DNA from: Macrostomum lignano
Lineage: Eukaryota
Assembly (NCBI GenBank): GCA_002269645.1
Contig: NIVC01001121.1
Location: 186,001-250,000 of the forward strand
Length of the DNA stretch: 64,000 nt
Direction of reading: 5' to 3'
Positions 12,226-50,169 of this stretch are shown here, piece by piece. The notes below the pieces were generated by a model. That model did no database searches. It saw only the letters and a program-made list of their open reading frames with translations, and was not told the DNA's origin. A program made the translations under genes and the position numbers. Within the stretch, counting starts at the first letter, position 1. Each line of letters starts with the position of its first letter.

Positions 12226-12296
12226 CTGAAATCAGTCATGGCAAACCTTCTTTTGAGCAGCATTCTTTTGAGCATGCTTGAAAAGCTTCTCATTCG

Positions 12297-25851: not shown

Positions 25852-26564
25852 ACCTTTTTGTGCGGCAGCTTTTTTGGGAGCTTCGGTGTGTCGTTTGGGC
25901 AATTTACGTGTACATGTAATTGCGGGCCGTCTCACTGGTGAAAATAAAGTCCTAGCTTGAAATTGGACTTTCGATGAATTGCTCGTTAAGTCTGCGCTCT
26001 CAGGTGAAGACGCTGAACTGATCAAAACTGACACACTTTAAATATTTAAAACTGAAATAGTCTCTTTCGCAGTAGCAGCTGCTTATTGAAGACTTTTCCC
26101 AGGCATTTTGTTCCAAATTAAAGGCGTGTGACCCACCACTATTTTGTAGAAATTTACAGCTTTTTTGTCTTTGAGTCTTCGATCAATTTTTTCATTACTA
26201 CTATATTGCAAGCAGTTACATTAGCTAGAGTTTTGCTGTGCATAAATAATGTCAATTTCGATTCACAGCCTATAGTTTTATTACTTGTAGATTAATTCAA
26301 ACACAATCATCCGTCAATCAAAATTAACATGTTGCATGAAAATGCAGTTTCAAGTTCCAAACAGCTAGGGTCGAGATTTTGCCCGCGGGAGTGAATTTCC
26401 TGTCGAGATTTTCCAATGGAATGTAGCCCTAAATGCTTAGTAAGTGTTCCAAGGAAGGATCGTGCGAAAAGAAGGTCTAATAAAGTTTTGGTCTTGTATA
26501 ATAAATGTATAAGTTTTTGTTTTAATATCTGACCACGAACAACAGCAATCTGACGTATCCAGGT

Positions 26565-27012: not shown

Positions 27013-29377
27013 TATCCAACGTCAGCCGACATTTCCGATGTCTATCGACGTCGTTGCTAAATTTTCTGGGTATCTTTTTTACATTACGCCGACGGATAGA
27101 ACGGCGTCAATCATCGGCTAAATGTTTCAAAATTAGCAAGAAGGACGCGATTAAGAAGACGGCCTATTAAAAAAAGTCGACTTTGACGAAAAGTTTAGGA
27201 TCTAAAGTATTAAATTAAGTTTTAGAGCCCAAACAGGAAAAAAACTCTGATTTATCAAAGCGAGAACTAACAATAGCATGCGGACACAGCGCTGACAGTG
27301 ACAGAGAATGAGATATTACATGTAATATGCACCGCGCTGTCATTAAGGCGATCGACATTCTTTTTACTGGCCAAGTCCAAGACAGGCAAGGGTAGCGCGA
27401 TGAGTTAAAAATGGTTAGTGACTTGAGCCAATGCATTGCATTTCCACAATTTGTATAATGATAGGTATACAATTTGTATCTGAACAACCTTAAGTTAAAA
27501 GTAGAAATATAAACTTGCATATTTCGTTAGAGAAATTTGAACAAGAAACGTCTTTACTTAAAAATGTTTTTAAAGTTGAGATTAATATTTTAGCAAAATT
27601 GAGAAACAATAAGTCGAATAAAAGTTTTAAATTGACAGCATCATCAATTTTTTTACAGAGTACTCACTTACAAAAGTATTTGTAACACTTTCTTACAAAA
27701 ATTGTTTTTGAAAATAAAAAACTTCGAGCTTATGAGGTCGGGGGGGGGGGGTTTAAAGAAAAACTTCTGGTGGTCGCCGGGTTTAATTCGTTCGTTCCAG
27801 CCGTTCGAATCGGTGCGCTTCCGACGTTTCAAACAAACTTAAACGAAGGTCCGGCTTGCAGATGATGGGGAGCTCCGCTGCTGAGTTCTCAGACTCAGGG
27901 GGAGGGTAGCTGTGGTCGCGGCTGAGCGGTCTAGTTTTGCCGACGTTCAGAATGCCGAATGCAGAGATTTGTAGCCGAAAGGGGACTTCAAAATAAGCCA
28001 AATTTGTCGAGAGTCTTACTAATAGTAGTACATGTAGGTCGCTGCCACCACCGCAGTTATACGCGGGAAAAGCTCTAAAGCCTCCAACTAGCTTGAGTTT
28101 CGCTCTAGCGCTTCTCTGTAGACCGCTGAGAGTCAAAATAAAGCTTCCGAGGTCAGGAAGGCTAATACACCGTTTCACACACAAGATTTTATAAATCAGG
28201 CTGGCGTTAATATGGGGCCAGGTAGCTGAGTATAGCACTTATTTTATTACTGGCTGTTGCGCGCACTATAAGTAATATACTATGATGATAATTATTAGCT
28301 TCTAGATTACTTGGTCGGGTGAGGAGCTGGTCGGATCGGGATGTCGGGATTAAAGGTAGGGTCACCTCGAATATCTGGAGCTCGGAGTTCGGGACGGGTG
28401 AATTCAAACGATCAGAAGGGGGTTCCCGTCGAGAGTCTGATGGCTGGTAAAGGGGGGCGCAGACTCTTAAATAACGCTCTCATGAGCCACCCGGAGGAAA
28501 GGAGTTACCCCGGGTGGGAAGAGAGTTACACGCAATGGAAATGATCGGGTACACCGGGTGGTAACGATTAAACACCGGGTGTAAACCCTTATTCAAAGCA
28601 CAGTAAAACCAAGTTACGGGTCCGAGTGGGAGCCCGAAATACACTAAGAGGAAAAGTGGGATTTCCACGCAGGGAAATGACGTCGGTATGCGTAATTTCA
28701 CTTGGTGAGTAAATCCACGCAGAGGAAAATAAACATTACATTCGGTGGGGATAGTGGGAGGCCTCCGCGCCTACCACACTTATGTGGTAGGCCGGTCTAC
28801 CACTGGGGCTCCTTCAACAGTTGGCGACGCGCGAAACGCCTCCATCCGTTGGGATTGTGTTGACGTCATGAGCCGCTCCCCCGGATGACTGTGCGTTTTC
28901 CCCTCGTTGATCCCACCTTTGGTCCATTAGTTGCCCCGTCCTTTGGTTCCGCCTTGTTTTACTGTGTTATTCCCGGGTTTTATCCCTCTTTCCCACCAGT
29001 GTTCCCCTCGGTGTTCCCCCCTAGTGTTTCACCAGTTGAATTTATGTAATTTTTTGTATAAAAATCATTGCGTATAAAGTTTTGCTTAGACTGGAGCCTC
29101 CCCGAGTTACCTTGAGTTAAGTGTGAATTTGCAGTTATAACCGCCGTTTCACTCGGTCTACTGTCTCGTCTCATTCGTCTAATTTGATAGTTTGCGATAT
29201 TCATTTGTTTATTACTCAGAACTATTAACAAGTAAGCTAACTTGTCACTTGCTTAATTTATCTTACGTAGCATCTTTATTAATAATTAGTTGAACCGTAA
29301 TAATAATAACGAATAAGATAATAAGCTTCTAACATTAATATTTATCCAGTTGGACTTAATCGAAGCCTCTAGTTTAT

Positions 29378-32300
29378 CAGCCGTATATACACGTTAGGCG
29401 GTATAGAACACGGCAAAAACCGCCTATAAGGCAGTCCGTATCATGCTATATGATACAGTAGCATGCTATAGACCGCCTTTTTTATGCGCACAAGGGCCAA
29501 ATATGGCACAAATTTGAACAGACGTTTCTGCTTATTTTTTAGTTCACTAATGCAAAGTAGGCCTAGCGATTTTACTAACCTACTACGCTACTATTCTCTA
29601 GTACAGTATTTTAGTGTCACTAGAATGCTAGATAAAAATTAGGTCAGGATGACTTAGTTACAAGTGTAAGTGTTAACATTTAACATTATTTTATGTAGGC
29701 CTACTAGCTGTTTATTATTTCCACAATATTAATAGGCCCAGCGAATTAATATTAGAACAGGAGAACAATACAACTCGACTTAAAGTTCAATTAGTGAACT
29801 TGGATGGCGCTCAGTTTCAGTTTGTAGCTAGGCCTATGCACAATTTTGTAACTGAATGCAATAACTGTGTGACTAAGCTAGGCCTAGGGCTATATATTCA
29901 ATATTCTTTTTTCTGAACCCTGAATCCTGAGTTTAGGAGAGAAACTATTTAGTAAAGCTAGCTATATTGATAGATATATTGAACAACCATAATTTAGGGT
30001 TCTAATATACTATACTAATAGCCTATTATATATACGTAGTACAACTAGCTGAGCTAGCATAAAATTCCATAAATGGATGTATTTTTTATTTTTTATTTTA
30101 TTGATAAATTGGGTTCTATTCTACTATTTTATGTTATAGGTTAAGCCTGAAATTAGTATTTAGTATTTAGAGGTTCTATATTTTTTGTTTTTTTAACCTT
30201 CCCTTTCCCCATAACCTGCTAGCCTTCCCTATATGGTTACACCCTACTGCCCTTTACCATACCTTACCCCAATGGCCTTCCTACAACACTTGCTACCTTT
30301 TCTTATCAATACAAGCCTTTCCCATACCTTGCTGCCCTTCATTGTCTTTTATAGGCCTTTTCCATACCCTGCTGTCTTTCACAAACCTTGCTGCTCTTCA
30401 ATGTATCCTGCTTGGCCTTCATTGTATCTTGTTGGCCTTCCCACATGGCCACACCTTGCTGGCTTTTCCCATATCCTGCTAGCCTTCCCCACACCCTACT
30501 GTCTTTCCCCATACCCTGCTGTCTTTCCCCTACCCTGCTGTCCTTCCCCACACCCTTGCCAGCCTTCCTTACTCCTTGCTGGCCTTCCCCACACCCTGCT
30601 AGCTTCCCCACATCCTGCTGGCCTTCCCTACTCCCTGCTACCCTTCCCCACACCCTGCTGTCCTTCCCCATCAATGCAGGCCTTCCTCACTCCCTGCTGG
30701 CATTCCCCACACCCTGCCGGCCTTCCCCACACCCTTGCCAGCCTTCCTTACTCCTTGCTGGCCTTCCCCACACCCTGCTAGCTTCCCCACATCCTGCTCG
30801 CCTTCCCTACTCCCTGCTACCCTTCCCCACACCCTGCTGTCCTTCCCCACATCCTGCTGGCCTTCCCTACTCCCTGCTACCCTTCCCCACACCCTGCTGT
30901 CCTTCCCCATCAATGCAGGCCTTCCTCACTCCCTGCTGGCATTCCCCACACCCTGCCGGCCTTCCCCACATCCTGCTGGCCTTCCCTACTCCTTGCTACC
31001 CTTCCCCACACCCTGCCGGCCTTCCCCACATCCTGCTGGCCTTCCCTACTCCCTGCTACCCTTCCCCACATCCTGCTGTCCTTCCCCACACCCTGCTTGT
31101 CTTCACTACCAATGCAGGCTTTCCCTACACCCTGCTGTCCTTCCCCATACCCTGCTGTCTTTCCCCTACCCTGCTGTCCTTCCCCATCAATGCAGGCCTT
31201 CCTCACTCCCTGCTGGCATTCCCCACACCCTGCCGGCCTTGACACCCTTGCCAGCCTTCCTTACTCCTTGCTGGCCTTCCCCACACCCTGCTAGCTTCCC
31301 CACATCCTGCTCGCCTTCCCTACTCCCTGCTACCCTTCCCCACACCCTGCTGTCCTTCCCCACATCCTGCTGGCCTTCCCTACTCCTTGCTACCCTTCCC
31401 CACACCCTGCCGGCCTTCCCCACACCCTGCCGGCTTCCCCACATCCTGCTGGCCTTGCCTTCCCTACTCCCTGCTACCCTTCCCCACACCCTGCTGTCCT
31501 TCCCCACACCCTGCTTGCCTTACACTACCAATGCAGGCTTTCCCTACACCCTGCTGTCCTTCCCCATCAATGCAGGCCTTCCTCACTCCCTGCTGGCATT
31601 CCCCACACCCTGCCGGCCTTCCCCACATCCTGCTGGCCTTCCCTACTCCTTGCTACCCTTCCCCACACCCTGCCGGCCTTCCCCACACCCTGCCGGCTTC
31701 CCCACATCCTGCTGACCTTCTCTACTCCCTGCTACCCTTCCCCACACCCTGCTGTCCTTCCCCACACCCTGCCGGCCTTCCCCACACCCTGCCTGCTTCC
31801 CCTCATCCTGCTGGCCTTCCCTACTCCCTGCTACCCTTCCCCACACCCTGCTGTCCTTCCCCACACCCTGCTGTCTTTCCCCACACCCTGGTAATCTTCA
31901 CTACCAATGCAGGCTTTCCCTACACCTTGCTTTCCTTCCCCATCAATGCAGGCCTTTCCCACTCCCTTCTGGCATTCCCTACACCCTGCCGGCTTCCCCA
32001 CTTCCTGCTGGCCTTCCCTACTCCCTGCTACCCTTCCCCACACCCTGCCGGCTTCCCCACTTCCTGCTGGACTTCCCTACTCCCTGCTACCCTTCCCCAC
32101 ACCCTGCTGTCCTTCCCCACACCCTGCCGGCTTCTCCACATCCTGCCGGCTTCTCCACATCCTGCCGGCCTTCCGGGCTTCATCTCCCACTCAACCTCTT
32201 CCAGACAGCGCTCCTAGGCTACCCTTCCTGGCTACTCTTGCCAGGCTACCCCTCTTACTCAACCCCTCTCAGGCTCCTCTTCCACTCTACCCCTCCAAGG

Positions 32301-32939
32301 CAGCGCTCCGAGACTACCCCTCGCAGGCAGCCCTTCCAGTCTAACCCTCCCAGGCAGCTCTTCCAGGCTACTCTCCCAGGCTACCCCTTCCATGGCAACC
32401 ACTTCCAGGCTATCTCCCACTGTGCCCTTGAGTACTGTCTCCATTTATGTTCAAAACTGAGAAGATTGTTTCGTTTCGGTATTATTAAAAAATATAACAC
32501 TATGCATCATTATTTACTTCAGACGCTTCACTCTCACCATTTCAGGTGCGTACATGCGAGTCAGCTAACGCTGACGCCGCACTTTGTATTCGGCTTTCCA
32601 ACGGGGAACTGTGCGTTTATGAAAGCCATTTGGGATTTGGAATGCCAGAAAAGATATTTTATTTTGCAAGGATCCGATGAATGCTGCGGCTTCGGCTGCA
32701 GTGACCACTGGCTCAAGCGGAGGACGATCGCAGGACTGTCTGCTGCCTGCCGCTTCGGCTGCAGTGACCACCGGCTCAAGCGGAGGACGATCGCAGGACT
32801 GTTTGCTGCCTGCCGCTTCGGCTGCAGTGACCGCCGGCTCAAGCGGAGGACGATCGCAGGACTGTTTGCTGCCTGCCGCTTCGGCTGCAGTGACCGCCGG
32901 CTCAAGCGGAGGACGATCGCTGCTCCGCGTGCTATCATC
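29378..32939 (+). repeat. Left TIR: ~830-bp AT-rich domain, C-rich ~21-bp minisatellite (~30200-32170), 63-bp tandem repeats (~32686-32920)
   Basis: Reverse complement of the right arm; ORF 30233 mirrors ORF 45810. Confidence 0.92.
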
Positions 32940-33899
32940 CAGTCCGGTTCCGTTTCGACCTTAACGAACAGTGGCAAAGTGAGGGTTATTTAATAACTAT
33001 GTTTATTACCTGAACGATTGTCTGAAGTGATGCGTGTTCGTGGGATTCACCCTGGCGATGCGCAGTCCTGTACCAGCGGTTTGTAGTTGCTGTGTAGCTG
33101 AAGTTTTTGCGGGCAGCTCTATGTTGCGCGTATTACTTCAGTTGTTTTTGCGTAGCTGCATAAAGTTTTTCTATCCAAGCGGCACGTTACCTTTGCGTTT
33201 ATTGAGAGCTGTAATTTTTTGTCCGAATAACAAATAAAAAAGCACTTTTGCTCGATCGATGTCACCCGGTAATTTGGCTGTTGCGCCACGCATTTTAGTG
33301 CAGTTTTGAAAGGTCAAATCGTCCAAGTAGTTTTCTAATTTTTTCACTTTGTGTTACACTTATTTGAGAAATTTCGTTCGTGCAAAAGAATTGACCAGAC
33401 TGCAAGTCGCGGTTTGAATTTCGGATCGCGGCGGCCTGAAAATTCTCTCATCCTGCTCAGAATGTTAAACTATCCTTAGCTAATGGCAAACTATCCACAT
33501 AGTCTGGCTAATTTGCTACCTCAAGTAAGCTAGGCTTAAAAATAGCACCAAAATTGGGTTGCATGAACAAGCTCGCACTAGCAAAAGCAAGCACGGCTAG
33601 AATGGAGATTAGCACAAGAGCTCAAGTATTTTGGAGCAAGAGCGTATTGACACTGACGCAACTCACGCAAGTATTTCACCTACATGTATGTTCAATCATG
33701 GATTAGTGCCAGTATGCACACGAGTATGTTTGACCTAGCTGCAGAGGAGATCATCCGGCGGATGCAGCGATCAGGAGGCGAAGAAGACCGCCCAATTCCG
33801 CTAGCCTCTGGCGACCATGAATGACTTCCATCGAAGTGATGTCCCTTCCGGGGGCGTCGGTCTCGCTTGCAGCGCGGTCCTCCTCACCGGCGGTGGGGA

Positions 33900-34620
33900 A
33901 AACTCAGCTGAGGTACCGGGTGAGCATCGATATGCTCTCGGGCTTGCAAGCGTCGGAGAGTTGGGCCGGGGTGAGTGAGTGGTGAAGACCAGGTAGTGGC
34001 AGATAAATTGTTCTGCGTTTTTACTGCCTGTTGAGCGGCAGAAGAGCTTGGGGCACCGCGCACGGCTCCTCAAGTACCTGGCCCTGAGGAAGCGGTGGCG
34101 AGAGAAGCAGCCATGCATGCCCGGAGAGGGCCCATGTACATGTAAATGCTCTTAAGATCCCTGAGGTTGAGCCTAAGGAAGGCTCTACGCAGGGGGACAG
34201 CAGCACGAGATTTCCTGCAATTTCGAGTGTTGATCCTGCCACCTGCGGAGATGCTAAGAGTCAGCCCAGTGCTTGACGCGGGAGTTAATCACCGAGGCGC
34301 AGGGGTGGGGGCCCCTGGGCCCGGTCCAGAAGCGTGCCGGCGGAGCCAGCCTTGCCGGGATGGAAACCATGACATCGTAGGCCGGGATCAATTTGAGCTC
34401 CACCTGCTGGTTGCCCAGCGCAAGCCCTGCATGGAGCCGGGCGTTGCAGTCCAGGACAGATCTGGAGTTGGTGGTGCTGCAGCAGACGGCCAGAAGGGCT
34501 GCTTGGCTGTCGGAGTGAAAAATAAATTTCTGACTGCAAGCTAAGCTGCCTTCGAACAGCTCTGGCACCACACAGGAGCTGATGGCAAGCACCTCGCTCT
34601 AAAAAACACTGGAATTGAGT
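33900..34620 (-). mobile_element. Decayed non-LTR retrotransposon RNase H / C-terminal fragment (R1/I-like)
   Basis: SSVF*SEVLAI (SVFQAEV.AI motif with CAG>TAG), FHSDSQAALLAV...SRSVLDC...VELKLIP, RFWTGP, and a degenerate C-terminal Cys/His region. Confidence 0.75.
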
Positions 34621-34934
34621 CCCTGTGTGCTGCTATTTGGTAGTTAATAATACCTTTGCATGCAAGCTTAATATTTAACAACCAAAACAGATCTCTACTT
34701 TTGCCACTTTTACTGATTGCAAGTGAATCCACACGAAGCCGTGAAGTGGATTGAGCTGGACTAAAAAACGTATTTTGCGCTGATTTGAAGAGCACTGGAA
34801 ATTCACCGAAATTGTAGCATCGATATCTCAGCAACTATTCAATATTTTGACAAGCGGTAAAGTACTGCTGGTGCAGAATTTCTTTACCTATTATCGAGTA
34901 TAATTTCATGCGCCAAATCTATCGTTTTGGGGAA

Positions 34935-35548
34935 CAGTATGGCTCGGAAAGAAGTGCATTTTGGCATAACTCCAGTACAAAGGTACAAAAGTGGAATATA
35001 AAGGAAACTCCAGCACTGAAGCCTTGTAGACTCCAATACTATAGATTGATGGTAGATTTTAGCGTGCAGTTTAGTGCGACACTGCTCAGCGGCTTGCGTA
35101 GTTTTGATTAGTTGCAAGTTGCAGGACAGCCGGTTTACTTGCAGAATCTTTACCGGCAGCAGGTTGATAAGGTGTGAATTTGACAAGTACACCTAGGCCG
35201 GGGGATACATTTTTTTGGCATTTGCAGAGTGCCTTTCGCGCCTATGCGACCAACATTTTCTGATAGATTTCGGCCCCCTGAGTCGATTGGCGCCGGTCCC
35301 AGAGCGCCAGAAGGTCGTCCGGTAGAGTTATTTGCACTTTTCCGGTGCCAAAACCGAAGCTCCAGTATTGGAGCTGATACATGTATGACTCCAGCATTAG
35401 AGCATAAGGAAATTCCGGCATTGGAGCCAGCACCGATGCTCCAATGCTGGATTTATATCAGCGATCCAGTACTCGCTCCAATGCTGGAGTTTCCTTTATA
35501 TTCCACTACTGGAGTTATCCCAAATGCACTTCTTTCCTAGCCATACTG
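34935..35548. mobile_element. Tc1/mariner-type MITE
   Basis: ~80-bp inverted ends (cagtatggct.ggaaagaagtgcattt..gtggaatataaaggaaactccagca); right flank ACTG|TA, left flank AA|CAGT. Confidence 0.6.
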
Positions 35549-37414
35549 TACTGTAGTCCAGCTGAAATCCACTCCACGGCTCAGCGAGCAGAATGCATTT
35601 TTAGTCAAGTTTTTGTGCATTTTTGTGTAAACGTAGCCACTTATGTAGTAAATAGATCAGGCTTTTTCCTCGGCAGAAATTTGAGCAAGGGATAAACTTA
35701 CCTGTAGCTCATCAAAACTGACATTCTCTTCAATTTGATGGGTTCGGCCTTTCTAAGCCTATAGCTTCGGGCCTCAGAATTCGGAAATGAATCACTTAGA
35801 ACTCTGGCCTCTCACTCCTGTCAGATGGTCAGCCCCATGGTAGCTAGATTGTGGGCGAGCAGCAAGGTCCTATAGCTAGGAGAAGACAGCGAGAGACAAG
35901 CAGGGAGAATTTGAAAGGTAGAGATTAGCTAATCCGCAGATTAACTAACCCGCTACCACCAGTCCGTGCGCCCCGGCTCACCAAACCGGAGCTATCGAAA
36001 TCGGACTTCCGACTAGAGGGGCACTGCACTTACCTGCCATCTAGTGTCTTTTAGCTGTCTATCTCGAAGTCATAGCCGAATAGAAGGGACGCTGCTGGGA
36101 CTAAGATCGCATTGGCCATGCAGGGACAGAGAGGACTTTTGCAGGGGGTTCTTGCGCTGGCGAGCCTTCATACACTACTAAATGTACTATTTCATTACCG
36201 AATTCCCAGAAGTACATGCATAAGTACACGTAACTGCACGCTTTTGGCACTAAATGTGTTAACACGTCGACAGATAACGATGGTGTAGATGTATTGTCAC
36301 TTTTGGAGACCTTCAGACTAATATTTATCTCGTTTTAGCCGCTTAGCTGCCTGAGACAGCGCGAAAGCGCCAGTCTGGCACTTAATTTGCATGCTTAACA
36401 TAATGATTTCTTAGATCGACTGATTGACTGGGAACTGTGCCGCTTCCGGTCCACCGTGACCTCTGCCTCTAGATTAAGCCGCTCATCTCAGCTGGTATTG
36501 CGAAAAAGAAAGAAAACGCTAAGTCTTTAACTTCCAGATTTAACTTTCTCACTTAATCCGCAATCCTAAACACATTAGATTGAGTTAGAGCAAATGGCTA
36601 ATTTTAATATTAACTAACACTTCTGCCTCGAGATTGGCACACAAAAGCAAGTAAGCAAAAGTGCAAATCCTATCAGACTACCTAGGAAGGGGTTAGACAA
36701 AGGGTGCACCCAGTTAAGCAGGTCAAAAGAGCCTCTCACCCAACTAATCAGAGGACCTATCTGCCGGTAGCCAAGGAATCCACAGAGACCGAAACACTCA
36801 GATGGTATGCTGCTGCTGATCTTAACTGACGCGCGACGCTGTTGCTCCTCACTTGCCGGTTGTCGTTGCTGCTCTTAGATCACTGCCGGGAGATATTGAT
36901 GATGCTTCTCAGGGGGAACTTAGCTTTTGAAGACGAAACTGCCGGGGGAAGGAGGATCAGATCGGCAGGACCGTAGGGGGAAGAGCCAGAAGGCAGTATC
37001 AGGCCAAGTTGAGCGCCCCAGGCATTGGCAAGGACAAAAACCGGGAGATATTTCGAGCGCAGTTAGAGTTGCCGCCTTTTATAGCTCTCACGCGGCCGAT
37101 TTGTTTTAACGCACGCTGAATTTTCCGATTGGCTGAGAGCTTTTGTTAAAACTCCGCCGTTGTGAAATTTCGGTCTTATGAAGTATCGGTCTTGTGAAGT
37201 ATGGTTTCGGCGTTGTGAAATTTCGGTCTTATGAACCCCCCCCATGTAGCTAGTGCATGTGCACTTGCCAAGCACGTCACAGAGAAGGCAAAACTTTTCC
37301 CCGATATTGTGCTTCTCAAATCAAATACTCGTACGTATTTAAATTAATAACATGCAATCCGTGTTTCCCGTTCGTTATTTTCAGCAGTACAGCATTTTTG
37401 CACCCCCTCATAAT

Positions 37415-40400
37415 TGTTGTGTGTCGCGTTTTAGAACTCTTTCTTAATTCAAAATGCACACTAGCTCTATGTACACGCGACACTGTACATTGCATGAATC
37501 AATATTTCAACCCGCTTCACTTGACAATATATATAGTCTGACTTTGGCCAACTTGGGCCTTAAGAGTTTTGTCGTGCCTAAATGTCTCGCTTGTTCCTAC
37601 ATAACATGGCGTCGCAAGCATAAAGTACTTTCCCCAATAGCCAAGCAAGCTAGCTAATGGAAGGACTGAGGCCTCCAGAGCCGATGGTTTTTGATGCCAA
37701 TCGCGCAGATAACTGGAGAAAATGGAGCAAAGCGATCGACTTCTACATGAAGGCAACCAAGAAGACGGAGGAGAGCGAAGAGGTCAAGATTGCAATACTG
37801 TTGACTGCGCTCGGATCAGAAGGACAAGACGTGTTCTCCACCTTCCCGACAGCCGAAGTGGCGACATACGCTGGGGTTCTCAATCAATTCAAGAATTACT
37901 GTGAGCCAATGAGCAACGAGACCTTCGACCGCTACCTGTTCAGAACCAGAGTGCAGAAGGAGTCGGAAGACTTCGATCAGTTCGTTGCCTCTCTGCGACA
38001 GCTCGTGACCAGGTGCAACTACGCGACACCGGCCAACGGCGAGTCAGTCGGCGACAGCGTCATCCGCGACCAGATCGTGATCGGAGTCGGCGACCCAGCG
38101 CTCAAAGAGAGACTACTCCGTGAGTCCAACCTGACACTCAACCGTGCAATTCAGATGGGACGGGCTTCGGAGACGTCAAAGCGACAGGCTAGCGCTCTGC
38201 TGGCAACTCAGAGCGGCCGAGCTCCGCCGTCAACGGTGGATGTTGTCCAAGGTGGACCCCGAGCACCAGCTGGCCCACCAAAACCGCCTTCAGGCCGCGG
38301 CTGTGGCTTCTGCGGACTGCAGCACGAGCGGAGAAAATGCCCAGCCTACGGTAGGAAGTGTAACAGCTGTGGCCGTCTGAACCACTTCTCGTCAATGTGC
38401 CGGTCCTCAAAGAAAGTCAACGAGCTCCAGGAGGACAAGCAGCAGCTGGATGACGCTGACCAAGAGGCAAAACCAGCGACAGTCATGACAGTTGAGAAAC
38501 TGGAAGCTCAGCGTCTGCACGACTACTCAGCAATGATGGTGAATCTCACGGCAAAGGATTCGGGACGGATGCTCCAGTTTAAGGTCGATACTGGGGCAGA
38601 TGTCAACGTTGTTCCGCTGCGATGCCTGATCAAGTTCGCCCCTGCGGCTGAAATTGAGCCCACATCCTGGACACTCACTACCTACAACAGACAGCAGCTG
38701 GATGTCGTCGGCCTAACTCACCTGACAGTTTCGTCTCCGTGTCAGAAAAACGTTAAACTTCAGTTTGTAGTCGTTGGAGAAAACGCGACTCCGATCATAG
38801 GTTGGAAGTCAGCACTGCATGAGTTGCATCTCATCAGGAAGCTTTTTGCCATAAACAAGAGCCCAGCCAATCTCAGCAAAGTTGAGAAACCCCACCAGTC
38901 TCAGATCACTAGCAGCCAGCTGATAGCAGACTATCCGACTGTGTTCAAAGGTGTCGGGTGCATGAAGCAGCAGTACACAATTCAGCTAACAGAAAATGCC
39001 GCTCCAAAAGTCCAGCCGCCACGCAAGGTTCCATTCGCGGCCTATCAGCCATTGAAGTGCGAGCTGGAGCGCCTGGAGAGAGATGGGAAAATTGTTCGAG
39101 TAGACGAGCCGACTCAATGGGTTTCAAACGTCACCATTGTCTGGAAGAAGGACGGCTCGATGCGCCTATGCCTTGATCCAACATACCTGAACCAGTTCAT
39201 CATCCGCGAATATCACCCGATTCCAACGGCGGAGGAAGTTCGGATGGCGACTGCTGGAGCCGTGGTGTACAGCACATTTGACGCCAACGAGAGTTTCCAT
39301 CAGCTCAAGCTAGATGAGCAGAGCTCGTTCCTCACTACGTTCCATACTCCATTCGGCCGTTACAGGTGGAAGCGGGTGCCGTACGGCTTATCATCGATCC
39401 CCGAAGTGTTCCAAAAGCGCATGGAGGAGAATGTCACCGGTCACGTCAAGAACTCGAAAAACTTTTTCGATGACATTATCGTGTGGGGGCGCACCATCGA
39501 GGAACATGACACTGCAGTTCGCAGCCTGATGGAGCAGTGCAAGCGCGCTAACGTGACGCTGAATCCGAACAAGATGCGAGTTGGAGCCCCAGAGCTGAAC
39601 TACTTAGGTGATATTCTGGGCCCTGATGGAATTCGAGCTGATCCACAGAAGGTCAAGGCAATCAAGCAGATGGCAAGACCCGACTCTCTGGAAGGCGTAA
39701 CCGCAAAGAAAGAGCAACTGAGGCGTTTTCTCGGCTGTGTCACCTACTTGGCAAGATTCTGCCCGCACCTGTCAGCCACTGCGGAACCACTGAGGCATCT
39801 CCTGAAGAAGGAAATCATATGGAGCTGGCTGGATCAGCACGACCAGGCGTATGATGCAATCATCGCGGATCTGTGCTCGAACCGGGTGCTGGCTACCTTT
39901 GACACAGCCAAGCCCGTAACGGTTTCAGTCGACGCAAGCAAGAGTGGAATTGGCGCAGTGCTGCTACAAGACCATCGCCCAGTCGAATACGCGTCCTCTG
40001 CAATGACCAGTGCCCAGCGAGCATATGCACAAATCGAGAAAGAGCTTCTTGCTATTGTCTATGGCTGCAAAAAGTTCCATCGATACATCTGGGGCCGGAC
40101 AGTGCATGTCCAGAGCGACCACAAGCCGTTGGAGGCGATCTTCAAGAAGGCTCTGTGTGACACAACGCCTCGAATTCAGCGACTTATGCTCCAGTTGCAG
40201 CCTTATGACATTCGCGTCAAGTACACTCCCGGAAAGGAGTTGCACGTAGCCGACACATTGAGCCGAGCACACGGTGCAGCTGATCTCCTCACAATTCAGC
40301 TAGAAGAAGCCCTCGATGGTCAAGTCCTATCAGTCGAGCGCTGCTTTAGCGGGGACCGCGAGATCTTGCACATGATCAAGAATGCAACAGCCAAAGATAT

Positions 40401-42400
40401 GACGAGCGAGCGGTTGCGGAATGTCATCCTAGACGGTTGGCCAGAGCACAGAGCGAGGTTGACAGACGACCTGAAGCCGTTTTGGGACGTTCGGCATGAC
40501 CTGACCTATGCTTCCGGACTTTTGTGCTTGAAGGACCGGATCTATGTTCCCAGCGGAGATTCAAGGAAACAGGTGCTCAAAATTCTTCATGCTGGGCACC
40601 CAGGCATCGTGAAAATGCACCTCAAGGCTAAGGACTATTTCTACTGGCCAGGAATGCGGAGCTGTGTGGAGCAGGTCGTCACTGACTGCGAGTCTTGTCA
40701 GCGAAACATGAGAACCCAGTCTAAGGAGACGCTGATGACGGTGGACATGCCGAGCTTCCCATTCCAAGATTGCTCCACAGACCTGTTCGAGTTCGGCGGT
40801 TCATCCTACCTGGTGTACGTGGACTCCTACAGTCGCTGGATGAATGTCACTCGAATGAGATCGACCACCAGCGCAGCTGTCGTTTCAGTGATTCGGGACC
40901 ATTTTCAAAACTTCGGAGTGCCAGAGAAACTCGTCAGCGACGGAGGTCCACAGTTTTCCGCTCGGGAATTTCGACAGACGATAGCAGAATTCAAGGTCGA
41001 GCACCGAACTTCAAGTCCGACGTACCCGCAATCAAATGGAAGAGCAGAACGCTACGTACAAACGGCAAAGAATATGCTGAAGAAGTGCTCAGAGACTGGA
41101 CAGAACCTGGAGCTGGCGTTGCTTCACTACCGCAACACCCCAGTCGGCAGCGGCTTTCCGAGTCCAGCTGAGATGGCATTCGGTCGTAAGCTCCGGTGCG
41201 ACTTGCCGGCAACTGTTCAAGATTTGCGGCCAAAGGAAATTCACCTACACTCAAGCATAGAGGCCTTTGAGAAGCAGCGCACTCGGGCAGCGCAGTTGTA
41301 CAACCGAGGAGCTCGACCATTGAGGAGACTAGCTGCTGGTGATCTGGTCTGGCTCCAACGAGGTCGTCGCGACTGGGTGGCTGCTGAGATCGACAGCGAG
41401 CTGGAGAATTGTCCAAGGTCGTACTGGGTTCGAACCGAGACTGGTCAGCTGCTCAGAACGAATCGCCGTTTCATCAGGCCTCGAATGGTAGATGTGCCAT
41501 TCAGCGAGTCTCTCCATTGTGACAGCGAGGATGTCGACGAGGCTGAGCAGCCGGCCTCCGTGCAGCCGGCCTCTGCGCAGCCGGCCTCCGTGCAGCCGGC
41601 CTCTGTGCAGCCGGCCTCTGCGCAGCCGGCCTCCGTGCAGCCGGCCTCTGTGCAGCCGGCCTCTGCGCAGCCGGCCTCTGTGCAGCCGGCCTCCGTGCAG
41701 CCGGCCTCCGTGCAGCCGGCCTCCGTGCAGCCGGCCTCCGTGCAGCCGGCCTCAAAGCAGTCAGATGAGCCGTACAGGACAATGCGTGGCCGAGTTGTCA
41801 AAACGCCAGTTTTCTATCATCCGAGTTAAGCCGCTGTATTGATGAAGATAAGTTGACGCTTGATTCTGATTTGAGTTAAAGTTTGATGAACTGTTTTTTT
41901 GGAACTGTTTGAGCTTGCGAATCGTAAGGTCGCGTTATATTCCGCATTGACTTCCGACTTTGTATTCTTAGACAGTGGAGAGATTAGGAGTGTATTGTTG
42001 CATTGTATCGGTCCAGAGCTTTGCATTAAAGTTAATGTGCATTGTTTGTATCAATGTTGCCAATGTTATTAGTCCAACATGACTCAAAGATTGTAGTTTT
42101 TTTAAATCCGCTTCCATTCGAATTTGCTTTTATTTCCGCTTCCGTTCGGAGATTTTGCTAAATACTTTAATACTGTAATCGGTTAACAAACTTATTTCTT
42201 GCGTTGGGAGATGTGTGTCGCGTTTTAGAACTCTTTCTTAATTCAAAATGCACACTAGCTCTATGTACACGCGACACTGTACATTGCATGAATCAATATT
42301 TCAACCCGCTTCACTTGACAATATATATAGTCTGACTTTGGCCAACTTGGGCCTTAAGAGTTTTGTCGTGCCTAAATGTCTCGCTTGTTCCTACTTAACA
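37415..42400 (+). mobile_element. Intact young Ty3/gypsy (Mag/K02A2.6-like) LTR retrotransposon
   Basis: LTRs 37415-37606 and 42212-42400 (TG..CA; differ by a 3-nt terminal indel and one substitution); PBS TGGCGTCGC at 37607; 5-bp TSD ATAAT (37410-37414, 42401-42405). Confidence 0.97.
37657..41829 (+). CDS. Single-ORF Gag-Pol polyprotein (1390 aa)
   Basis: Gag with Cys/His knuckles (CNSCGRLNHFSSMC), protease (KVDTGAD), RT (FFDD), RNase H (VDASKSGIGAVL..EKELLAI), integrase (HAGHPG..CESC; DLF, SDGG, NGRAER), C-terminal S(V/A)QPA repeats. Confidence 0.97.
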   Translation: MEGLRPPEPMVFDANRADNWRKWSKAIDFYMKATKKTEESEEVKIAILLTALGSEGQDVFSTFPTAEVATYAGVLNQFKNYCEPMSNETFDRYLFRTRVQKESEDFDQFVASLRQLVTRCNYATPANGESVGDSVIRDQIVIGVGDPALKERLLRESNLTLNRAIQMGRASETSKRQASALLATQSGRAPPSTVDVVQGGPRAPAGPPKPPSGRGCGFCGLQHERRKCPAYGRKCNSCGRLNHFSSMCRSSKKVNELQEDKQQLDDADQEAKPATVMTVEKLEAQRLHDYSAMMVNLTAKDSGRMLQFKVDTGADVNVVPLRCLIKFAPAAEIEPTSWTLTTYNRQQLDVVGLTHLTVSSPCQKNVKLQFVVVGENATPIIGWKSALHELHLIRKLFAINKSPANLSKVEKPHQSQITSSQLIADYPTVFKGVGCMKQQYTIQLTENAAPKVQPPRKVPFAAYQPLKCELERLERDGKIVRVDEPTQWVSNVTIVWKKDGSMRLCLDPTYLNQFIIREYHPIPTAEEVRMATAGAVVYSTFDANESFHQLKLDEQSSFLTTFHTPFGRYRWKRVPYGLSSIPEVFQKRMEENVTGHVKNSKNFFDDIIVWGRTIEEHDTAVRSLMEQCKRANVTLNPNKMRVGAPELNYLGDILGPDGIRADPQKVKAIKQMARPDSLEGVTAKKEQLRRFLGCVTYLARFCPHLSATAEPLRHLLKKEIIWSWLDQHDQAYDAIIADLCSNRVLATFDTAKPVTVSVDASKSGIGAVLLQDHRPVEYASSAMTSAQRAYAQIEKELLAIVYGCKKFHRYIWGRTVHVQSDHKPLEAIFKKALCDTTPRIQRLMLQLQPYDIRVKYTPGKELHVADTLSRAHGAADLLTIQLEEALDGQVLSVERCFSGDREILHMIKNATAKDMTSERLRNVILDGWPEHRARLTDDLKPFWDVRHDLTYASGLLCLKDRIYVPSGDSRKQVLKILHAGHPGIVKMHLKAKDYFYWPGMRSCVEQVVTDCESCQRNMRTQSKETLMTVDMPSFPFQDCSTDLFEFGGSSYLVYVDSYSRWMNVTRMRSTTSAAVVSVIRDHFQNFGVPEKLVSDGGPQFSAREFRQTIAEFKVEHRTSSPTYPQSNGRAERYVQTAKNMLKKCSETGQNLELALLHYRNTPVGSGFPSPAEMAFGRKLRCDLPATVQDLRPKEIHLHSSIEAFEKQRTRAAQLYNRGARPLRRLAAGDLVWLQRGRRDWVAAEIDSELENCPRSYWVRTETGQLLRTNRRFIRPRMVDVPFSESLHCDSEDVDEAEQPASVQPASAQPASVQPASVQPASAQPASVQPASVQPASAQPASVQPASVQPASVQPASVQPASVQPASKQSDEPYRTMRGRVVKTPVFYHPS

Positions 42401-43832
42401 ATAATTGGTGCCCCTCATTACTCATGTTGGCCTCCCAAACTTGGACCGCCCCCTCCCAAAATGAAATTCTAGATCCGCCACTGCTCGTATATGATAAGAC
42501 TGACTGAATTTACTATTACTAATATACTTATACTAGTTATAAATCATGTCTCAATCCGATGGAAACAACTTACGTATGTAAATGTCCATGTACCAGGAAA
42601 GTCATGGCTATTTAAAAAGTGGCAGGATGTCAGGCTATGAGAGCACGAGACTTTTCCACAGAGGCTTTTCTTGCCGAGCTTTCCTCTCATTTTTAACCAA
42701 CAGGTGCTGCAGAGACAGAGGGCGAGAAGGAGAAAGGGAGGCCAATAGGGGGAGATAAACTATTGAGACTACTGTAATGTAAAATCATACCTCTCGTAAA
42801 ATCATGTAAAATCATGTAAAATCACTTTATACCTCGCGCCATATGGCTCTACCTCCCACTATTCTTTGTGACCATATTTGTGTCATCATCAAAAGAGAAT
42901 TCGATAAAACAGGAATGTTTCAGGACATGACAGAGCGAATTATCGTAAAAAGCATAGTTAAAAGCAGTGAAGTCTGTTTTATTTTAGAGGCACATGTTTA
43001 CAATACTCAGTTAAGTATATACATGTACCCGTAAAACTGCACATTGACAAAAGACAATGAAAAACTCTTGTCGAAAAAATGCGCTGCATAGTTCTCTCAA
43101 ACTCGACAAGGGGGGGACAAAAAACTGGTTACAGCATTACAGAGCGAGAAAAAGAGCGTCAGCGTTTGATGGTAGTGCAATAGTGCAAAGAAGTCACGGA
43201 TTAAATGTTGCATACGCCACGGGCACAGAGAAGTGTGACCAAACATTTATACGGCTACGTCGGCTAACAGCTAATTTCTGTCCAATGTGGCTGAATAGTC
43301 ATCCATGTCGTAGTCGTCACCGTCGTCTTCTTTCACCTCAGAGGATCCTGCGTGCACTCTGCGTCCTATGAATAGGCAGCAGCGTAATGCACATTGCTTT
43401 GTCTCATCTCGATACCTGCCAATGAACGAGAGAAAAAGTCCTTGTATTTAAAATGCAAATGCATGATGCAAAGCATTCCAATACAGTTCATAGCTAATCT
43501 GCATTGTTAGCACTTGATGCTTGAGTGACTATGAGCGGAGAAGCTGAATAGGTTCTGTAAGCGACCAACACAATTCACTGATTTCACTAGGAAGAAGCTA
43601 AATACATGCCATCTTACCATCTACGTACTCTTGTTTCAAACGACTTCAATTTACGTATTCTGCTGATGATATTGTAGAGTCTATAAGCGGCAGCATATAA
43701 TTGTCGTATTTTTTTACTCACTGCTAATTAAACGAGAAGATAAATAACTGGCATAGATCTCCTCTAAAAGAAATCGGATAATATGCTTCTTCATTAGTCC
43801 TTCGATCGCCCTTAGCACTCACAACACTAGTA

Positions 43833-46667
43833 GATGATAGCACGCGGAGCAGCGATCGTCCTCCGCTTGAGCCGGCGGTCACTGCAGCCGAAGCGGCAGG
43901 CAGCAGACAGTCCTGCGATCGTCCTCCGCTTGAGCCGGCGGTCACTGCAGCCGAAGCGGCAGGCAGCAGACAGTCCTGCGATCGTCCTCCGCTTGAGCCG
44001 GCGGTCACTGCAGCCGAAGCGGCAGGCAGCAGACAGTCCTGCGATCGTCCTCCGCTTGAGCCGGCGGTCACTGCAGCCGAAGCGGCAGGCAGCAGACAGT
44101 CCTGCGATCGTCCTCCGCTTCTGGAAGAGGTTGAGTGGGAGATGAAGCCCGGAAGGGCTGCCTGGGAGGGGTAGAGTCGGGTTAGCCTGGAGGGGCTGTC
44201 TGGGAGGGCTGTCTGGGAGGGCTGTCTGGGAGGGATAGCCTGTGAGAGGTAGAGTGGCAGGGTGTGGGAAATGACAGCAGGGTATGGGGAAGGCCGGCAG
44301 GGTGTGGGGAAGGGTAGCAGGAAATAGGGAAGGCCGGCAGGATGTGGAGAAGCCGGCAGGATGTGGAGAAGCCGGCAGGGTGTGGGGAAGGACAGTAGGG
44401 TGTGGGGAAGGGTAGCAGGGAGTAGGGAAGTCCAGCAGGAAGTGGGGAAGCCGGCAGGGTGTGGGGAAGGGTAGCAGGAAAAAGGGAAGGCCAGCAGTAG
44501 GGAAGGCTGGCAGGGTGTGGGGAAGGCCGGCAGGGTGTGGGGAATGCCAGCAGGGAGTGGGAAAGGCCTGCATTGATGGGGAAGGACAGCAGGGTGTAGG
44601 GAAAGCCTGCATTGGTAGTGTAAGGCAAGCAGGGTGTGGGGAAGGACAGCAGGGTGTGGGGAAGGGTAGCAGGAAATAGGGAAGGCCGGCAGGATGTGGA
44701 GAAGCCGGCAGGATGTGGAGAAGCCGGCAGGGTGTGGGGAAGGGTAGCAGGGAGTAGGGAAGGCCAGCAGGAAGTGGGGAAGCCGGCAGGGTGTAGGGAA
44801 TGCCAGAAGGGAGTGGGAAAGGCCTGCATTGATGGGGAAGGAAAGAAAGGTGTAGGGAAAGCCTGCATTGGTAGTGAAGATTAGCAGGGTGTGGGGAAAG
44901 ACAGCAGGGTGTGGGGAAGGACAGCAGGGTGTGGGGAAGGGTAGCAGGGAGTAGGGAAGGCCAGCAGGATGAGGGGAAGCAGGCAGGGTGTGGGGAAGGG
45001 TAGCAGGGAGTAGAGAAGGTCAGCAGGATGTGGGGAAGCCGGCAGGGTGTGGGGAAGGCCGGCAGGGTGTGGGGAAGGGTAGCAAGGAGTAGGGAAGGCC
45101 AGCAGGATGTGGGGAGGGCCGGCAGGGTGTGGGGAATGCCAGCAGGGAGTGAGGAAGGCCTGCATTGATGGGGAAGGACAGCAGGGTGTAGGGAAAGCCT
45201 GCATTGGTAGTGTAAGGCAAGCATGGTGTGGGGAAGGACAGCAGGGTGTGGGGAAGGGTAGCAGGGAGTAGGGAAGGCAAGGCCAGCAGGATGTGGGGAA
45301 GCCGGCAGGGTGTGGGGAAGGCCGGCAGGGTGTGGGGAAGGGTAGCAAGGAGTAGGGAAGGCCAGCAGGATGTGGGGAAGGACAGCAGGGTGTGGGGAAG
45401 GGTAGCAGGGAGTAGGGAAGGCGAGCAGGATGTGGGGAAGCTGGCAGGGTGTGGGGAAGGCCAGCAAGGAGTAAGGAAGGCTGGCAAGGGTGTGGGGAAG
45501 GACAGCAGGGTAGGGGAAAGACAGCAGGGTATGGGGAAAGACAGTAGGGTGTGGGGAAGGCTAGCAGGATATGGGAAAAGCCAGCAAGGTGTGGCCATGT
45601 GGGAAGGCCAACAAGATACAATGAAGGCCAAGCAGGATACATTGAAGAGCAGCAAGGTTTGTGAAAGACAGCAGGGTATGGAAAAGGCCTATAAAAGACA
45701 ATGAAGGGCAGCAAGGTATGGGAAAGGCTTGTATTGATAAGAAAAGGTAGCAAGTGTTGTAGGAAGGCCATTGGGGTAAGGTATGGTAAAGGGCAGTAGG
45801 GTGTAACCATATAGGGAAGGCTAGCAGGTTATGGGGAAAGGGAAGGTTAAAAAAACAAAAAATATAGAACCTCTAAATACTAAATACTAATTTCAGGCTT
45901 AACCTATAACATAAAATAGTAGAATAGAACCCAATTTATCAATAAAATAAAAAATAAAAAATACATCCATTTATGGAATTTTATGCTAGCTCAGCTAGTT
46001 GTACTACATATATATATAATAGGCTATTAGTATAGTATATTAGAACCCTAAATTATGGTTGTTCAATATATCTATCAATATAGCTAGCTTTACTAAATAG
46101 TTTCTCTCCTAAACTCAGGATTCAGGGTTCAGAAAAAAGAATATTGAATATATAGCCCTAGGCCTAGCTTAGTCACACAGTTATTGCATTCAGTTACAAA
46201 ATTGTGCATAGGCCTAGCTACAAACTGAAACTGAGCGCCATCCAAGTTCACTAATTGAACTTTAAGTCGAGTTGTATTGTTCTCCTGTTCTAATATTAAT
46301 TCGCTGGGCCTATTAATATTGTGGAAATAATAAACAGCTAGTAGGCCTACATAAAATAATGTTAAATGTTAACACTTACACTTGTAACTAAGTCATCCTG
46401 ACCTAATTTTTATCTAGCATTCTAGTGACACTAAAATACTGTACTAGAGAATAGTAGCGTAGTAGGTTAGTAAAATCGCTAGGCCTACTTTGCATTAGTG
46501 AACTAAAAAATAAGCAGAAACGTCTGTTCAAATTTGTGCCATATTTGGCCCTTGTGCGCATAAAAAAGGCGGTCTATAGCATGCTACTGTATCATATAGC
46601 ATGATACGGACTGCCTTATAGGCGGTTTTTGCCGTGTTCTATACCGCCTAACGTGTATATACGGGTG
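43833..46667 (-). repeat. Right TIR: 63-bp repeats (~43851-44119), G-rich minisatellite (~44250-45845), AT-rich outer domain
   Basis: Mirror of the left arm with different repeat copy numbers and ~0.5 kb of the inner segment missing. Confidence 0.92.
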
Positions 46668-49356: not shown

Positions 49357-49875
<519 letters not shown>

Positions 49876-50169
49876 ATATTCTGTTTGCTGCCAATAAGAG
49901 ACGCCTTGATTGACAGACTTGTGTCAGAGTGCTTGCGATGCGGGCTGTTGTAGAGCTAAATACATCTAGTTAGGCGTTGGCTTATTGATTTCGAATGCGC
50001 TGAAATCACTTGTGTGGATTTGAAGAGAAAAAACGATAGTAGTTTAACAGTCTTCAGTAACCGTTTTTTTTACTTTTTCTTATCTTTCTCTAGTGCTGAG
50101 GCAAGACTGCGGACCAGAATAGGGGAGAGAAGAGAGAGAATTGAGATCAGAGAAAAATGAGAGGAGATT

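What the first reader, a model, noticed from the sequence alone, without database searches (positions are those of the whole stretch)
29378..46667. Giant Galileo-like foldback transposon carrying 10.9 kb of cargo
Multi-kb inverted arms end in CA(G/C)CCGTATATACACG and are bounded by an exact 7-bp TSD (AGTTTAT), so the unit moved as one piece. Long TIRs with internal tandem repeats, CA..TG ends and 7-bp TSDs are hallmarks of Galileo, a P-superfamily foldback known from Drosophila, where it generates chromosomal inversions. I found no THAP or transposase ORF. The interior holds a LINE RNase H relic, a Tc1 MITE, an intact gypsy and unexplained DNA. It may represent an undescribed non-autonomous foldback family able to carry cargo and rearrange chromosomes.
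Basis: partly seen in the sequence, partly recalled or inferred. Interest (0 to 1): 0.85.

Follow-up and report, generated by a model that had tools for sequence, protein, structure and literature searches.

The report
Flatworm foldback transposon, transposase unknown
A 17.3-kb mobile DNA element with multi-kilobase mirror-image arms sits in a Macrostomum-type flatworm genome and shows a clean insertion footprint. It encodes no enzyme of its own, so calling it "Galileo-like" rests only on its shape and a 7-base footprint.

Summary
Window 29378-46667 is one unit. Its inverted arms are 3,562 and 2,835 bp. The ends are CAGCCGTATATACACG and CACCCGTATATACACG, and an exact 7-bp direct repeat (AGTTTAT) flanks them.

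Each arm has an 800-bp unique outer domain, a 20-bp tandem array (about 87 and 68 units) and 63-bp repeats. The 10,893-bp middle holds:
- an intact Ty3/gypsy element
- a Tc1-like MITE
- a 5'-truncated LINE fragment (RNase H and C-terminus)
- about 4.4 kb with no detectable homology

No transposase is detectable.

A Macrostomum lignano gene model (UniProt A0A1I8IG78) is translated across a second copy. That copy has inverted 63-bp repeat blocks flanking the same middle pieces, including the LINE relic. So the family has at least two copies, and part of the "cargo" is inherited.

It is best read as a non-autonomous foldback-type cut-and-paste transposon moved in trans. The superfamily is unresolved. 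A 7-bp TSD fits Galileo/1360 (P superfamily). However, the TSD sequence does not fit Galileo's GTANTAC, foldback architecture has arisen in several superfamilies, and no autonomous copy could be reached. The Galileo label and the inversion idea remain untested. Interest is moderate: a new member of a known kind.

The parts
29371..29377 (.). Left target-site duplication AGTTTAT
29378..32939 (+). Left arm, 3,562 bp. The terminus is CAGCCGTATATACACG.
29378..30177 (+). Outer unique AT-rich domain of the left arm. It holds the terminal 16-mer, a GGCGG...CCGCC hairpin motif, and the palindrome TAGGCCTA four times (29558, 29696, 29829, 29879).
30178..32174 (+). 20-bp tandem array (consensus CCACACCCTGCTGGCCTTCC). 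Units are degenerate toward the terminus (30178-30448) and homogeneous further in.
32216..32412 (+). 13/27-bp short tandem repeats in the inner left arm
32413..32683 (+). Stretch with no aligned counterpart in the right arm. Part of it (32571-32640) is nearly identical at the protein level to the M. lignano copy seen in P0018.
32684..32920 (+). 63-bp tandem repeats, 3.8 copies, at the inner end of the left arm
32940..43832 (.). Middle domain, 10,893 bp. No transposase. About 4.4 kb has no detectable homology.
33730..34637 (-). 5'-truncated non-LTR (LINE) fragment covering the C-terminal half of RNase H to the end of ORF2. It aligns to aa 965-1227 of a 1,235-aa M. lignano APE-RT-RNase H ORF2. 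The copy in P0018 shares it.
34934..35549 (.). Tc1-like MITE, 616 bp. Its TIR is ACAGTATGGCTCGGAAAGAAGTGCATTTTGG. It has no ORF.
37418..42400 (+). Nested intact Ty3/gypsy element. The 189-bp LTRs (TG..CA) differ at 1 position. The gag-pol ORF runs 37657-41829 (1,390 aa). The 7-nt repeat ATAATTG flanks it.
43833..46667 (-). Right arm, 2,835 bp. The terminus reads CACCCGTATATACACG on the minus strand. It holds 63-bp repeats (43852-44120), the 20-bp array (44257-45594) and the outer unique domain (45868-46667) with TAGGCCTA four times.
46668..46674 (.). Right target-site duplication AGTTTAT

Best explanation
This is a non-autonomous, foldback-type class II (cut-and-paste) DNA transposon of a Macrostomum-type flatworm.

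Shown:
- It has two near-identical multi-kb inverted arms. Each has a unique outer domain carrying the termini, then a 20-bp tandem array that is degenerate toward the tip, then 63-bp repeats.
- The arms enclose a non-coding middle domain, and an exact 7-bp target-site duplication bounds the whole unit.
- A related copy with the same middle pieces exists in M. lignano.

Inferred:
- A DDE transposase encoded elsewhere in the genome recognises the terminal CA(G/C)CCGTATATACACG and subterminal sites. The fourfold palindrome TAGGCCTA and the GGCGG/CCGCC motifs are candidates for those sites.
- The transposase excises the whole unit and reinserts it through cuts staggered by 7 bp.
- The arrays grow and shrink by unequal exchange or slippage, and exchange between the arms keeps them alike.
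- The middle domain is passenger DNA. An old 5'-truncated LINE fragment was acquired before the family spread. The MITE and the intact gypsy are nested insertions of uncertain timing.

Which transposase superfamily moves it is unresolved. P (Galileo/1360-type, 7-bp TSD) is the leading candidate at about 0.35, and Mutator/Foldback is next at about 0.2.
For: - The exact 7-bp TSD and the termini are unique to the two outer ends.
- The arms are collinear, with 4 mismatches and one 2-bp indel over the first 1,291 bp.
- The array anatomy, and its degeneracy toward the tip, match classical foldback elements.
- TAGGCCTA occurs 4 times per outer arm against 3 times in the other roughly 62 kb.
- No protein domain was found in any frame of the middle apart from the gypsy.
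- No homolog of the arms or middle was found apart from the LINE relic.
- The M. lignano gene model P0018 (UniRef A0A1I8IG78) matches the element in order and on one strand: 44248-43823, 43425-43304, 34511-34268, then 33114-32571. The 63-bp blocks at its two ends read from opposite strands. Its other 590 residues match nothing in the window.
- The literature supports two points: foldback elements are non-autonomous long-TIR derivatives mobilised in trans, and TSD length tracks the transposase (PMC4079207, PMC3169594, PMC3688188).
Against: - Only one complete copy with both junctions was seen, so the TSD length rests on n=1.
- The second copy is known only through a chimeric gene model. Its DNA, termini and TSD could not be retrieved. 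The gaps in its match could be introns or deletions.
- No autonomous partner, empty site or excision footprint was seen.
- The host species is not pinned down. The best homologs are M. lignano paralogs at 72% aa identity and 82-86% nt identity in exons. The window's exact RPS27A protein is not on record.
Confidence: 0.8

Rival explanations
1. The element belongs to the P superfamily. It would be a Galileo-type foldback mobilised by a THAP-domain P transposase.
For: - The 7-bp TSD is the length made by Galileo and 1360, and sometimes 8 bp (PMC4168063).
- The ends are CA..TG, and the long TIRs carry internal tandem repeats, as in Galileo (PMC3573991, PMC3688188).
- A TNNGGCA (THAP-core-like) match lies at +50 from the end, near where the P and Galileo THAP sites lie (PMC3688188). 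Such a match is expected by chance at about 0.2 per 100 bp, so this is weak.
Against: - No THAP domain or P transposase was found in the element.
- The TSD AGTTTAT matches GTANTAC at 2 of its 6 specified positions, and the 15-bp target is not palindromic (PMC4168063).
- P and Pdre2 ends start CAT, whereas this element starts CAG/CAC. Pdre2, the non-Drosophila example, makes 8-bp TSDs (PMC10983969).
- Architecture alone is not diagnostic (PMC3169594).
Confidence: 0.35
2. The element belongs to the Mutator/Foldback group (MULE or Phantom transposase), like Drosophila FB, Arabidopsis FARE and Meloidogyne Tm1.
For: - Most foldback elements whose transposase is known are Mutator-related (PMC4079207, PMC3169594).
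- The arm architecture, with arrays degenerate toward the tip and a non-coding middle, is the classical FB plan.
Against: - The TSD here is 7 bp. Tm1 makes 8-10 bp (mostly 9) and Tetris 8-10 bp (PMC3169594, PMC4079207).
- No MULE or FLYWCH domain was found.
Confidence: 0.2
3. It is a composite or coincidental structure. Either two separate elements inserted in inverted orientation around host DNA, or the region is a non-transposon inverted segmental duplication like the 9900-15249 palindrome in the same window.
For: The window does hold another 2.4-kb, 99.5%-identical palindrome without a TSD. So inverted duplications do arise in this genome, or in this assembly.
Against: - The matching 7-bp repeat sits at the two outer ends only.
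- The inner ends of the arms (32939 and 43833) carry no terminus-like sequence.
- The same middle pieces lie between inverted 63-bp blocks in an M. lignano gene model whose other exons are absent from this window.
Confidence: 0.04
4. It is an assembly artefact, for example a chimeric palindromic long read or collapsed repeats.
For: Palindromes and long tandem arrays are hard to assemble, and there are no read data here.
Against: - The arms differ in array length (87 against 68 units), in an arm-specific stretch and in point differences.
- The middle is 10.9 kb of asymmetric sequence.
- The junctions carry a clean TSD.
- A missed-adapter palindrome would be symmetric about a point.
Confidence: 0.03

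Closest known systems
Galileo (Drosophila; P superfamily foldback-like transposon)
   Same: Both have a 7-bp TSD, CA..TG ends, long TIRs with internal tandem repeats that differ in copy number between the two arms, many non-autonomous copies, and nested TE insertions inside copies (PMC3573991, PMC4168063).
   Different: - Galileo TIRs are about 0.7-1.6 kb; these arms are 2.8-3.6 kb.
- Galileo's TSD consensus GTANTAC and palindromic target motif are not seen here.
- No THAP/P transposase is linked to this family.
- The host is a flatworm, not a drosophilid.
- The conserved 40-bp Galileo end could not be compared.
Drosophila FB (Foldback), FB-like Tetris, and Meloidogyne Tm1 (Mutator/Phantom)
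   Same: All have arms built of a terminal unique segment plus tandem arrays that are more degenerate toward the tip, a variable non-coding middle domain, arms of unequal length and trans mobilisation. Tetris shows that such arrays can seed satellites (PMC4079207, PMC3169594).
   Different: Those families make 8-10 bp TSDs (mostly 9); this one makes 7 bp. No MULE or FLYWCH coding remnant is present.
P-like elements outside Drosophila (zebrafish Pdre2 / THAP9)
   Same: They are cut-and-paste elements of animals with CA-initial ends and subterminal inverted repeats (PMC10983969).
   Different: Pdre2 has 13-bp TIRs starting CAT and an 8-bp TSD. It has no foldback arms.

Membership tests
Foldback-type DNA transposon (structural class, polyphyletic) | Long terminal inverted arms containing tandem repeats, around a variable middle domain | tested here: met
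   The arms are 3,562 and 2,835 bp and carry 20-bp and 63-bp arrays. The middle is 10,893 bp.
Foldback-type DNA transposon (structural class, polyphyletic) | Target-site duplication at the outer ends, showing transposition of the whole unit | tested here: met
   AGTTTAT lies at both junctions. The termini are unique to the outer ends.
Foldback-type DNA transposon (structural class, polyphyletic) | Multi-copy family | tested here: inconclusive
   One further copy is inferred from the M. lignano gene model A0A1I8IG78. No DNA for it, and no genome-wide count, could be obtained.
Galileo (P superfamily, Drosophila) | Autonomous copies encode a P-type transposase with an N-terminal THAP domain | not testable with these tools
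   This copy encodes none. The host genome could not be searched for autonomous relatives.
Galileo (P superfamily, Drosophila) | 7-bp TSD | tested here: met
   The TSD is 7 bp, from a single copy.
Galileo (P superfamily, Drosophila) | Target preference GTANTAC within a 15-bp palindromic motif | tested here: not met
   The TSD is AGTTTAT in the context CTCT|AGTTTAT|ATTG, which is not palindromic (PMC4168063). One site only, so this is weak.
Galileo (P superfamily, Drosophila) | A terminal sequence of about 40 bp conserved among Galileo subfamilies | not tested
   No Galileo terminal sequence was available in the tools or in the texts read.
Mutator/Foldback (MULE, Phantom) | TSD of 8-10 bp, usually 9 | tested here: not met
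   The TSD is 7 bp, and no alternative boundary gives 8-10 bp (PMC3169594, PMC4079207).
Mutator/Foldback (MULE, Phantom) | MULE (with or without FLYWCH) transposase in autonomous copies | not testable with these tools
   This copy has none.
Dada | 6-7 bp TSD together with insertion into snRNA or tRNA genes (these features are from my own knowledge of the family) | tested here: not met
   The TSD length fits, but the window has no Rfam family and no tRNA.
hAT | 8-bp TSD (from my own knowledge of the family) | tested here: not met
   The TSD is 7 bp. The 8-mers at the two junctions do not match in register.
Ty3/gypsy LTR retrotransposon (nested element 37418-42400) | TG..CA LTRs and a gag-pol ORF with domain order RT, RNase H, integrase | tested here: met
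Non-LTR (LINE) retrotransposon fragment (33730-34637, minus strand) | Homology to the ORF2 of an APE-RT-RNase H element, truncated at the 5' end | tested here: met
   It aligns to aa 965-1227 of the 1,235-aa P0019, which carries Exo_endo_phos, RVT_1 and RNase_H domains.

The most novel reading that the evidence does not exclude
The family is a genuine P-superfamily foldback in Platyhelminthes. In that case the Galileo-type combination (7-bp TSD, kilobase TIRs with arrays) exists far outside Drosophilidae. It would have been active recently in the Macrostomum lignano group (arms 99.7% identical over the first 1,291 bp). It would be able to carry kilobases of passenger DNA, making it a candidate substrate for the ectopic recombination behind that group's unstable karyotypes.
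Probability: 0.25. Interest if true: 0.55.

Novelty: new member of a known kind. Interest (0 to 1): 0.35.

Why it matters
Foldback transposons are recombination-prone. In Drosophila, Galileo copies generated natural inversions. M. lignano and its relatives have polymorphic, recently reorganised karyotypes and a genome rich in tandem repeats (PMC5730564, PMC5068713, PMC7013459).

My literature searches found no description of a foldback family in this group, and this copy looks recently active. A genome-wide survey of the family could test three things: whether it marks rearrangement breakpoints, whether it seeds 20-bp and 63-bp satellites, and which transposase moves it. None of that is shown here. 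What is shown is one clean insertion and evidence for one further copy.

Tried and rejected
- **Pfam scans.** Six-frame Pfam scans of 32900-37700 and 42380-43900 found no transposase, and also missed the LINE relic.
- **Arm ORF homolog search.** A spurious 425-aa arm ORF gave no hits.
- **Word-indexed homolog search.** A 3,359-aa pseudo-protein of all stop-free segments of at least 50 aa from the outer arm and middle gave no hits. The later full HMMER search showed this was a false negative for the LINE relic.
- **Metagenome scan.** A 26-nt terminal sequence found nothing among metagenome contigs. Eukaryote genomes are not in the DNA collections.
- **Exact-protein look-ups.** The gypsy ORF, RPS27A and P0018 were not on record, so no empty site or second-copy DNA could be fetched.
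- **M. lignano loci.** The two loci fetched around fibrinogen-related paralogs share only exons and one repeat-rich gene with the window. They hold no copy of the terminus.
- **Literature.** Searches for described Macrostomum DNA-transposon superfamilies or foldbacks found nothing.
- **Rejected alternatives.** An 8-bp (hAT) or 9-bp (MULE) TSD with shifted boundaries does not fit the junctions. A Dada-type insertion is ruled out because the window holds no RNA gene. Each arm as a complete element is ruled out because the inner ends lack the terminus.


Full report
**1. Observation**

The finding is accurate to the base.
- AGTTTAT lies at 29371-29377 and again at 46668-46674.
- Between them, the element starts CAGCCGTATATACACG and ends with the reverse complement of CACCCGTATATACACG. 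The two ends differ only at position 3.
- A 24-nt terminal pattern allowing 3 mismatches occurs only at these two places in 64 kb, with none expected by chance.
- The arms run 29378-32939 and 46667-43833. The first 649 bp differ at one position, a 2-bp indel follows, and the next 642 bp differ at three positions. Further in, the arms differ mainly by whole repeat units.
- No shifted boundary yields an 8- or 9-bp duplication, so 7 bp is the only consistent reading.
- By my estimate from flank composition, a chance 7-bp match at the junctions has a probability of about 1e-4.

**2. Anatomy of the arms**

Measured from the tip:
- Offsets 1-800 are unique and AT-rich.
- Offsets 800-1100 hold degenerate 20-bp units, 62-68% identical to the consensus CCACACCCTGCTGGCCTTCC.
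- A homogeneous array follows: about 87 units on the left and 68 on the right.
- Next come short 13/27-bp repeats.
- On the left only, there is a stretch of about 270 bp with no aligned counterpart on the right.
- The arms end with 63-bp repeats, 3.8 copies on the left and 4.3 on the right.

The outer domain carries the palindrome TAGGCCTA four times per arm (offsets 181, 319, 452, 502). It occurs only three times in the remaining roughly 62 kb. Small GGCGG...CCGCC hairpin motifs lie within the first 100 bp. These are candidate protein-binding sites, which is inference. Arrays that degenerate toward the tip and arms of unequal length are the classical foldback plan (PMC4079207, PMC3169594).

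**3. The middle domain (32940-43832)**

- **Gypsy.** An intact Ty3/gypsy element occupies 37418-42400. Its 189-bp TG..CA LTRs differ at one base. Its 1,390-aa ORF carries a zinc knuckle, RT, RNase H and integrase. The 7-nt repeat ATAATTG flanks it, so it is a nested insertion.
- **MITE.** A 616-bp Tc1-like MITE lies at 34934-35549.
- **LINE relic.** Six-frame Pfam scans of the rest found nothing, and a word-indexed homolog search also found nothing. A full HMMER search of a pseudo-protein built from the longest stop-free segments did hit the RNase H region of M. lignano non-LTR ORF2 proteins. The fragment spans about 34637 to 33730 on the minus strand. It corresponds to aa 965-1227 of a 1,235-aa APE-RT-RNase H ORF2, which makes it a 5'-truncated LINE copy.
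- **Remainder.** About 4.4 kb has no detectable homology.
- **Transposase.** No THAP, P, MULE, hAT or other transposase remnant was detected.

**4. Host**

The flanks carry:
- a MACPF exon
- a fibrinogen-related gene whose best homologs are M. lignano proteins at 72% aa identity
- an intronless ubiquitin-RPS27A gene

Two M. lignano loci fetched around the paralogs align to the window only in exons (82-86% nt identity) and in one repeat-rich gene. The window's exact RPS27A protein is not on record. The host is therefore a Macrostomum-type flatworm. It is either M. lignano at an unannotated locus or a close relative. I cannot say which.

**5. A second copy**

One hit of the HMMER search, P0018, is UniRef A0A1I8IG78, a chimeric M. 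lignano gene model. It aligns to the window on one strand and in order:

| P0018 residues | Window coordinates | Part of the element |
|---|---|---|
| 142-285 | 44248-43823 | right-arm 63-bp repeats and arm/middle junction |
| 281-321 | 43425-43304 | middle domain |
| 320-398 | 34511-34268 | LINE relic, 70-89% identity |
| 388-715 | 33114-32571 | middle/left-arm junction, about 14 63-bp repeats, and an exactly matching 21-residue stretch in the left-only segment |

The two 63-bp blocks are read from opposite strands of the unit, so they are inverted in that DNA too. The other roughly 590 residues of P0018 match nothing in the window, which points to a different locus.

This shows the family is not single-copy. 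It also shows that the LINE relic and other middle pieces belong to the family and have been carried.

Caveats:
- The DNA of that locus could not be fetched.
- Its termini and TSD are unknown.
- The unmatched stretches may be introns of the model or deletions.
- If the window comes from a sibling species, orthology of the two sites cannot be fully excluded.

**6. Mechanism**

The best-supported reading is a non-autonomous cut-and-paste element mobilised in trans.
- Shown: termini, TSD, lack of coding capacity and a related copy.
- Inferred: recognition of the outer domain by a DDE transposase encoded elsewhere, integration with a 7-bp stagger, array dynamics by unequal exchange, and homogenisation between arms.

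The arms are 99.7% identical over 1,291 bp, while the M. lignano copy is visibly more diverged. This points to a recent insertion, to exchange between the arms, or to both.

**7. Comparison with known families**

- A 7-bp TSD is what Galileo and 1360 make (PMC4168063). Tm1, Tetris and other Mutator-type foldbacks make 8-10 bp (PMC3169594, PMC4079207). Dada-type targets (snRNA or tRNA genes) are absent from the window.
- So TSD length favours the P superfamily.
- Several points weigh against the Galileo label:
  - The TSD sequence does not fit Galileo's GTANTAC, and the target is not palindromic.
  - P and Pdre2 ends start CAT, and Pdre2 makes 8-bp TSDs (PMC10983969).
  - Foldback architecture has evolved repeatedly in different superfamilies (PMC3169594, PMC4079207, PMC3688188).
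  - The one defining feature, the transposase, could not be tested.
- I therefore file it as a foldback-type element of unresolved superfamily: P about 0.35, Mutator about 0.2, other or unknown for the rest.
- It works like Galileo or FB. Membership in Galileo is not established.

**8. Cargo and size**

Of the 10.9-kb interior:
- 5.0 kb is the gypsy and 0.6 kb is the MITE. Both are discrete nested elements that may postdate this insertion.
- About 0.9 kb is the shared LINE relic.
- About 4.4 kb is unexplained, and parts of it are shared with the M. lignano copy.

"Giant" therefore largely reflects nesting plus long arrays. Without the gypsy and the MITE, the element is about 11.7 kb.

**9. Verdict**

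This is a real, well-delimited foldback transposon. My literature searches found no description of such a family in flatworms. It is a new member of a known kind. The Galileo/P assignment and any role in inversions remain hypotheses, and a genome-wide survey would settle them quickly.

Noticed in passing
window 9900-15249: A second large palindrome. Its arms, 9900-12296 and 12859-15249, are 2,397 bp long and 99.5% identical. The 562-bp spacer is a MACPF-domain exon (ORF 12272-12838, plus strand). There is no TSD at the outer ends. The arms carry 344-aa ORFs, and a paralog with 72% nt identity lies at 434-1194. It could be an inverted duplication of a gene segment or an assembly issue.
   Followed up: partly
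window 37410-37417 and 42401-42408: The nested gypsy is flanked by ATAATTG(T) on the 5' side and ATAATTG(G) on the 3' side. This is a 7-nt direct repeat, offset by one base at the 5' junction. From my own knowledge, LTR elements usually make 4-6 bp TSDs.
   Followed up: no
window 49408-49875 (+): An intronless 155-aa ubiquitin-ribosomal protein S27a fusion ORF lies 2.7 kb to the right of the insertion. The exact protein is not on record in the collection. It may be the functional gene or a processed copy.
   Followed up: partly
window 50100-52200; also 52500-53000, 53650-54500, 54800-55700 and 56140-58940: A run of long tandem arrays. The 50.1-52.2 kb array is open in three frames on the minus strand. 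It is 66-72% identical at the nucleotide level to the 5' end of an annotated M. lignano gene (L002:1-1046).
   Followed up: no
window 24734-26037 (-): Two exons of a fibrinogen-related (FReD) gene. M. lignano paralogs share 82-86% nt identity in the exons only.
   Followed up: partly
window 21335-21985 (-) and 16242-16661 (-): More retroelement debris lies in the left flank: a gag-type aspartyl protease fragment and a weak integrase C-terminal hit.
   Followed up: no
method note: The word-indexed homolog search returned nothing for a query that contained the LINE relic. The exhaustive HMMER search then found hits down to E=2e-26. Long, low-complexity pseudo-protein queries seem to swamp the word prefilter.
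   Followed up: yes
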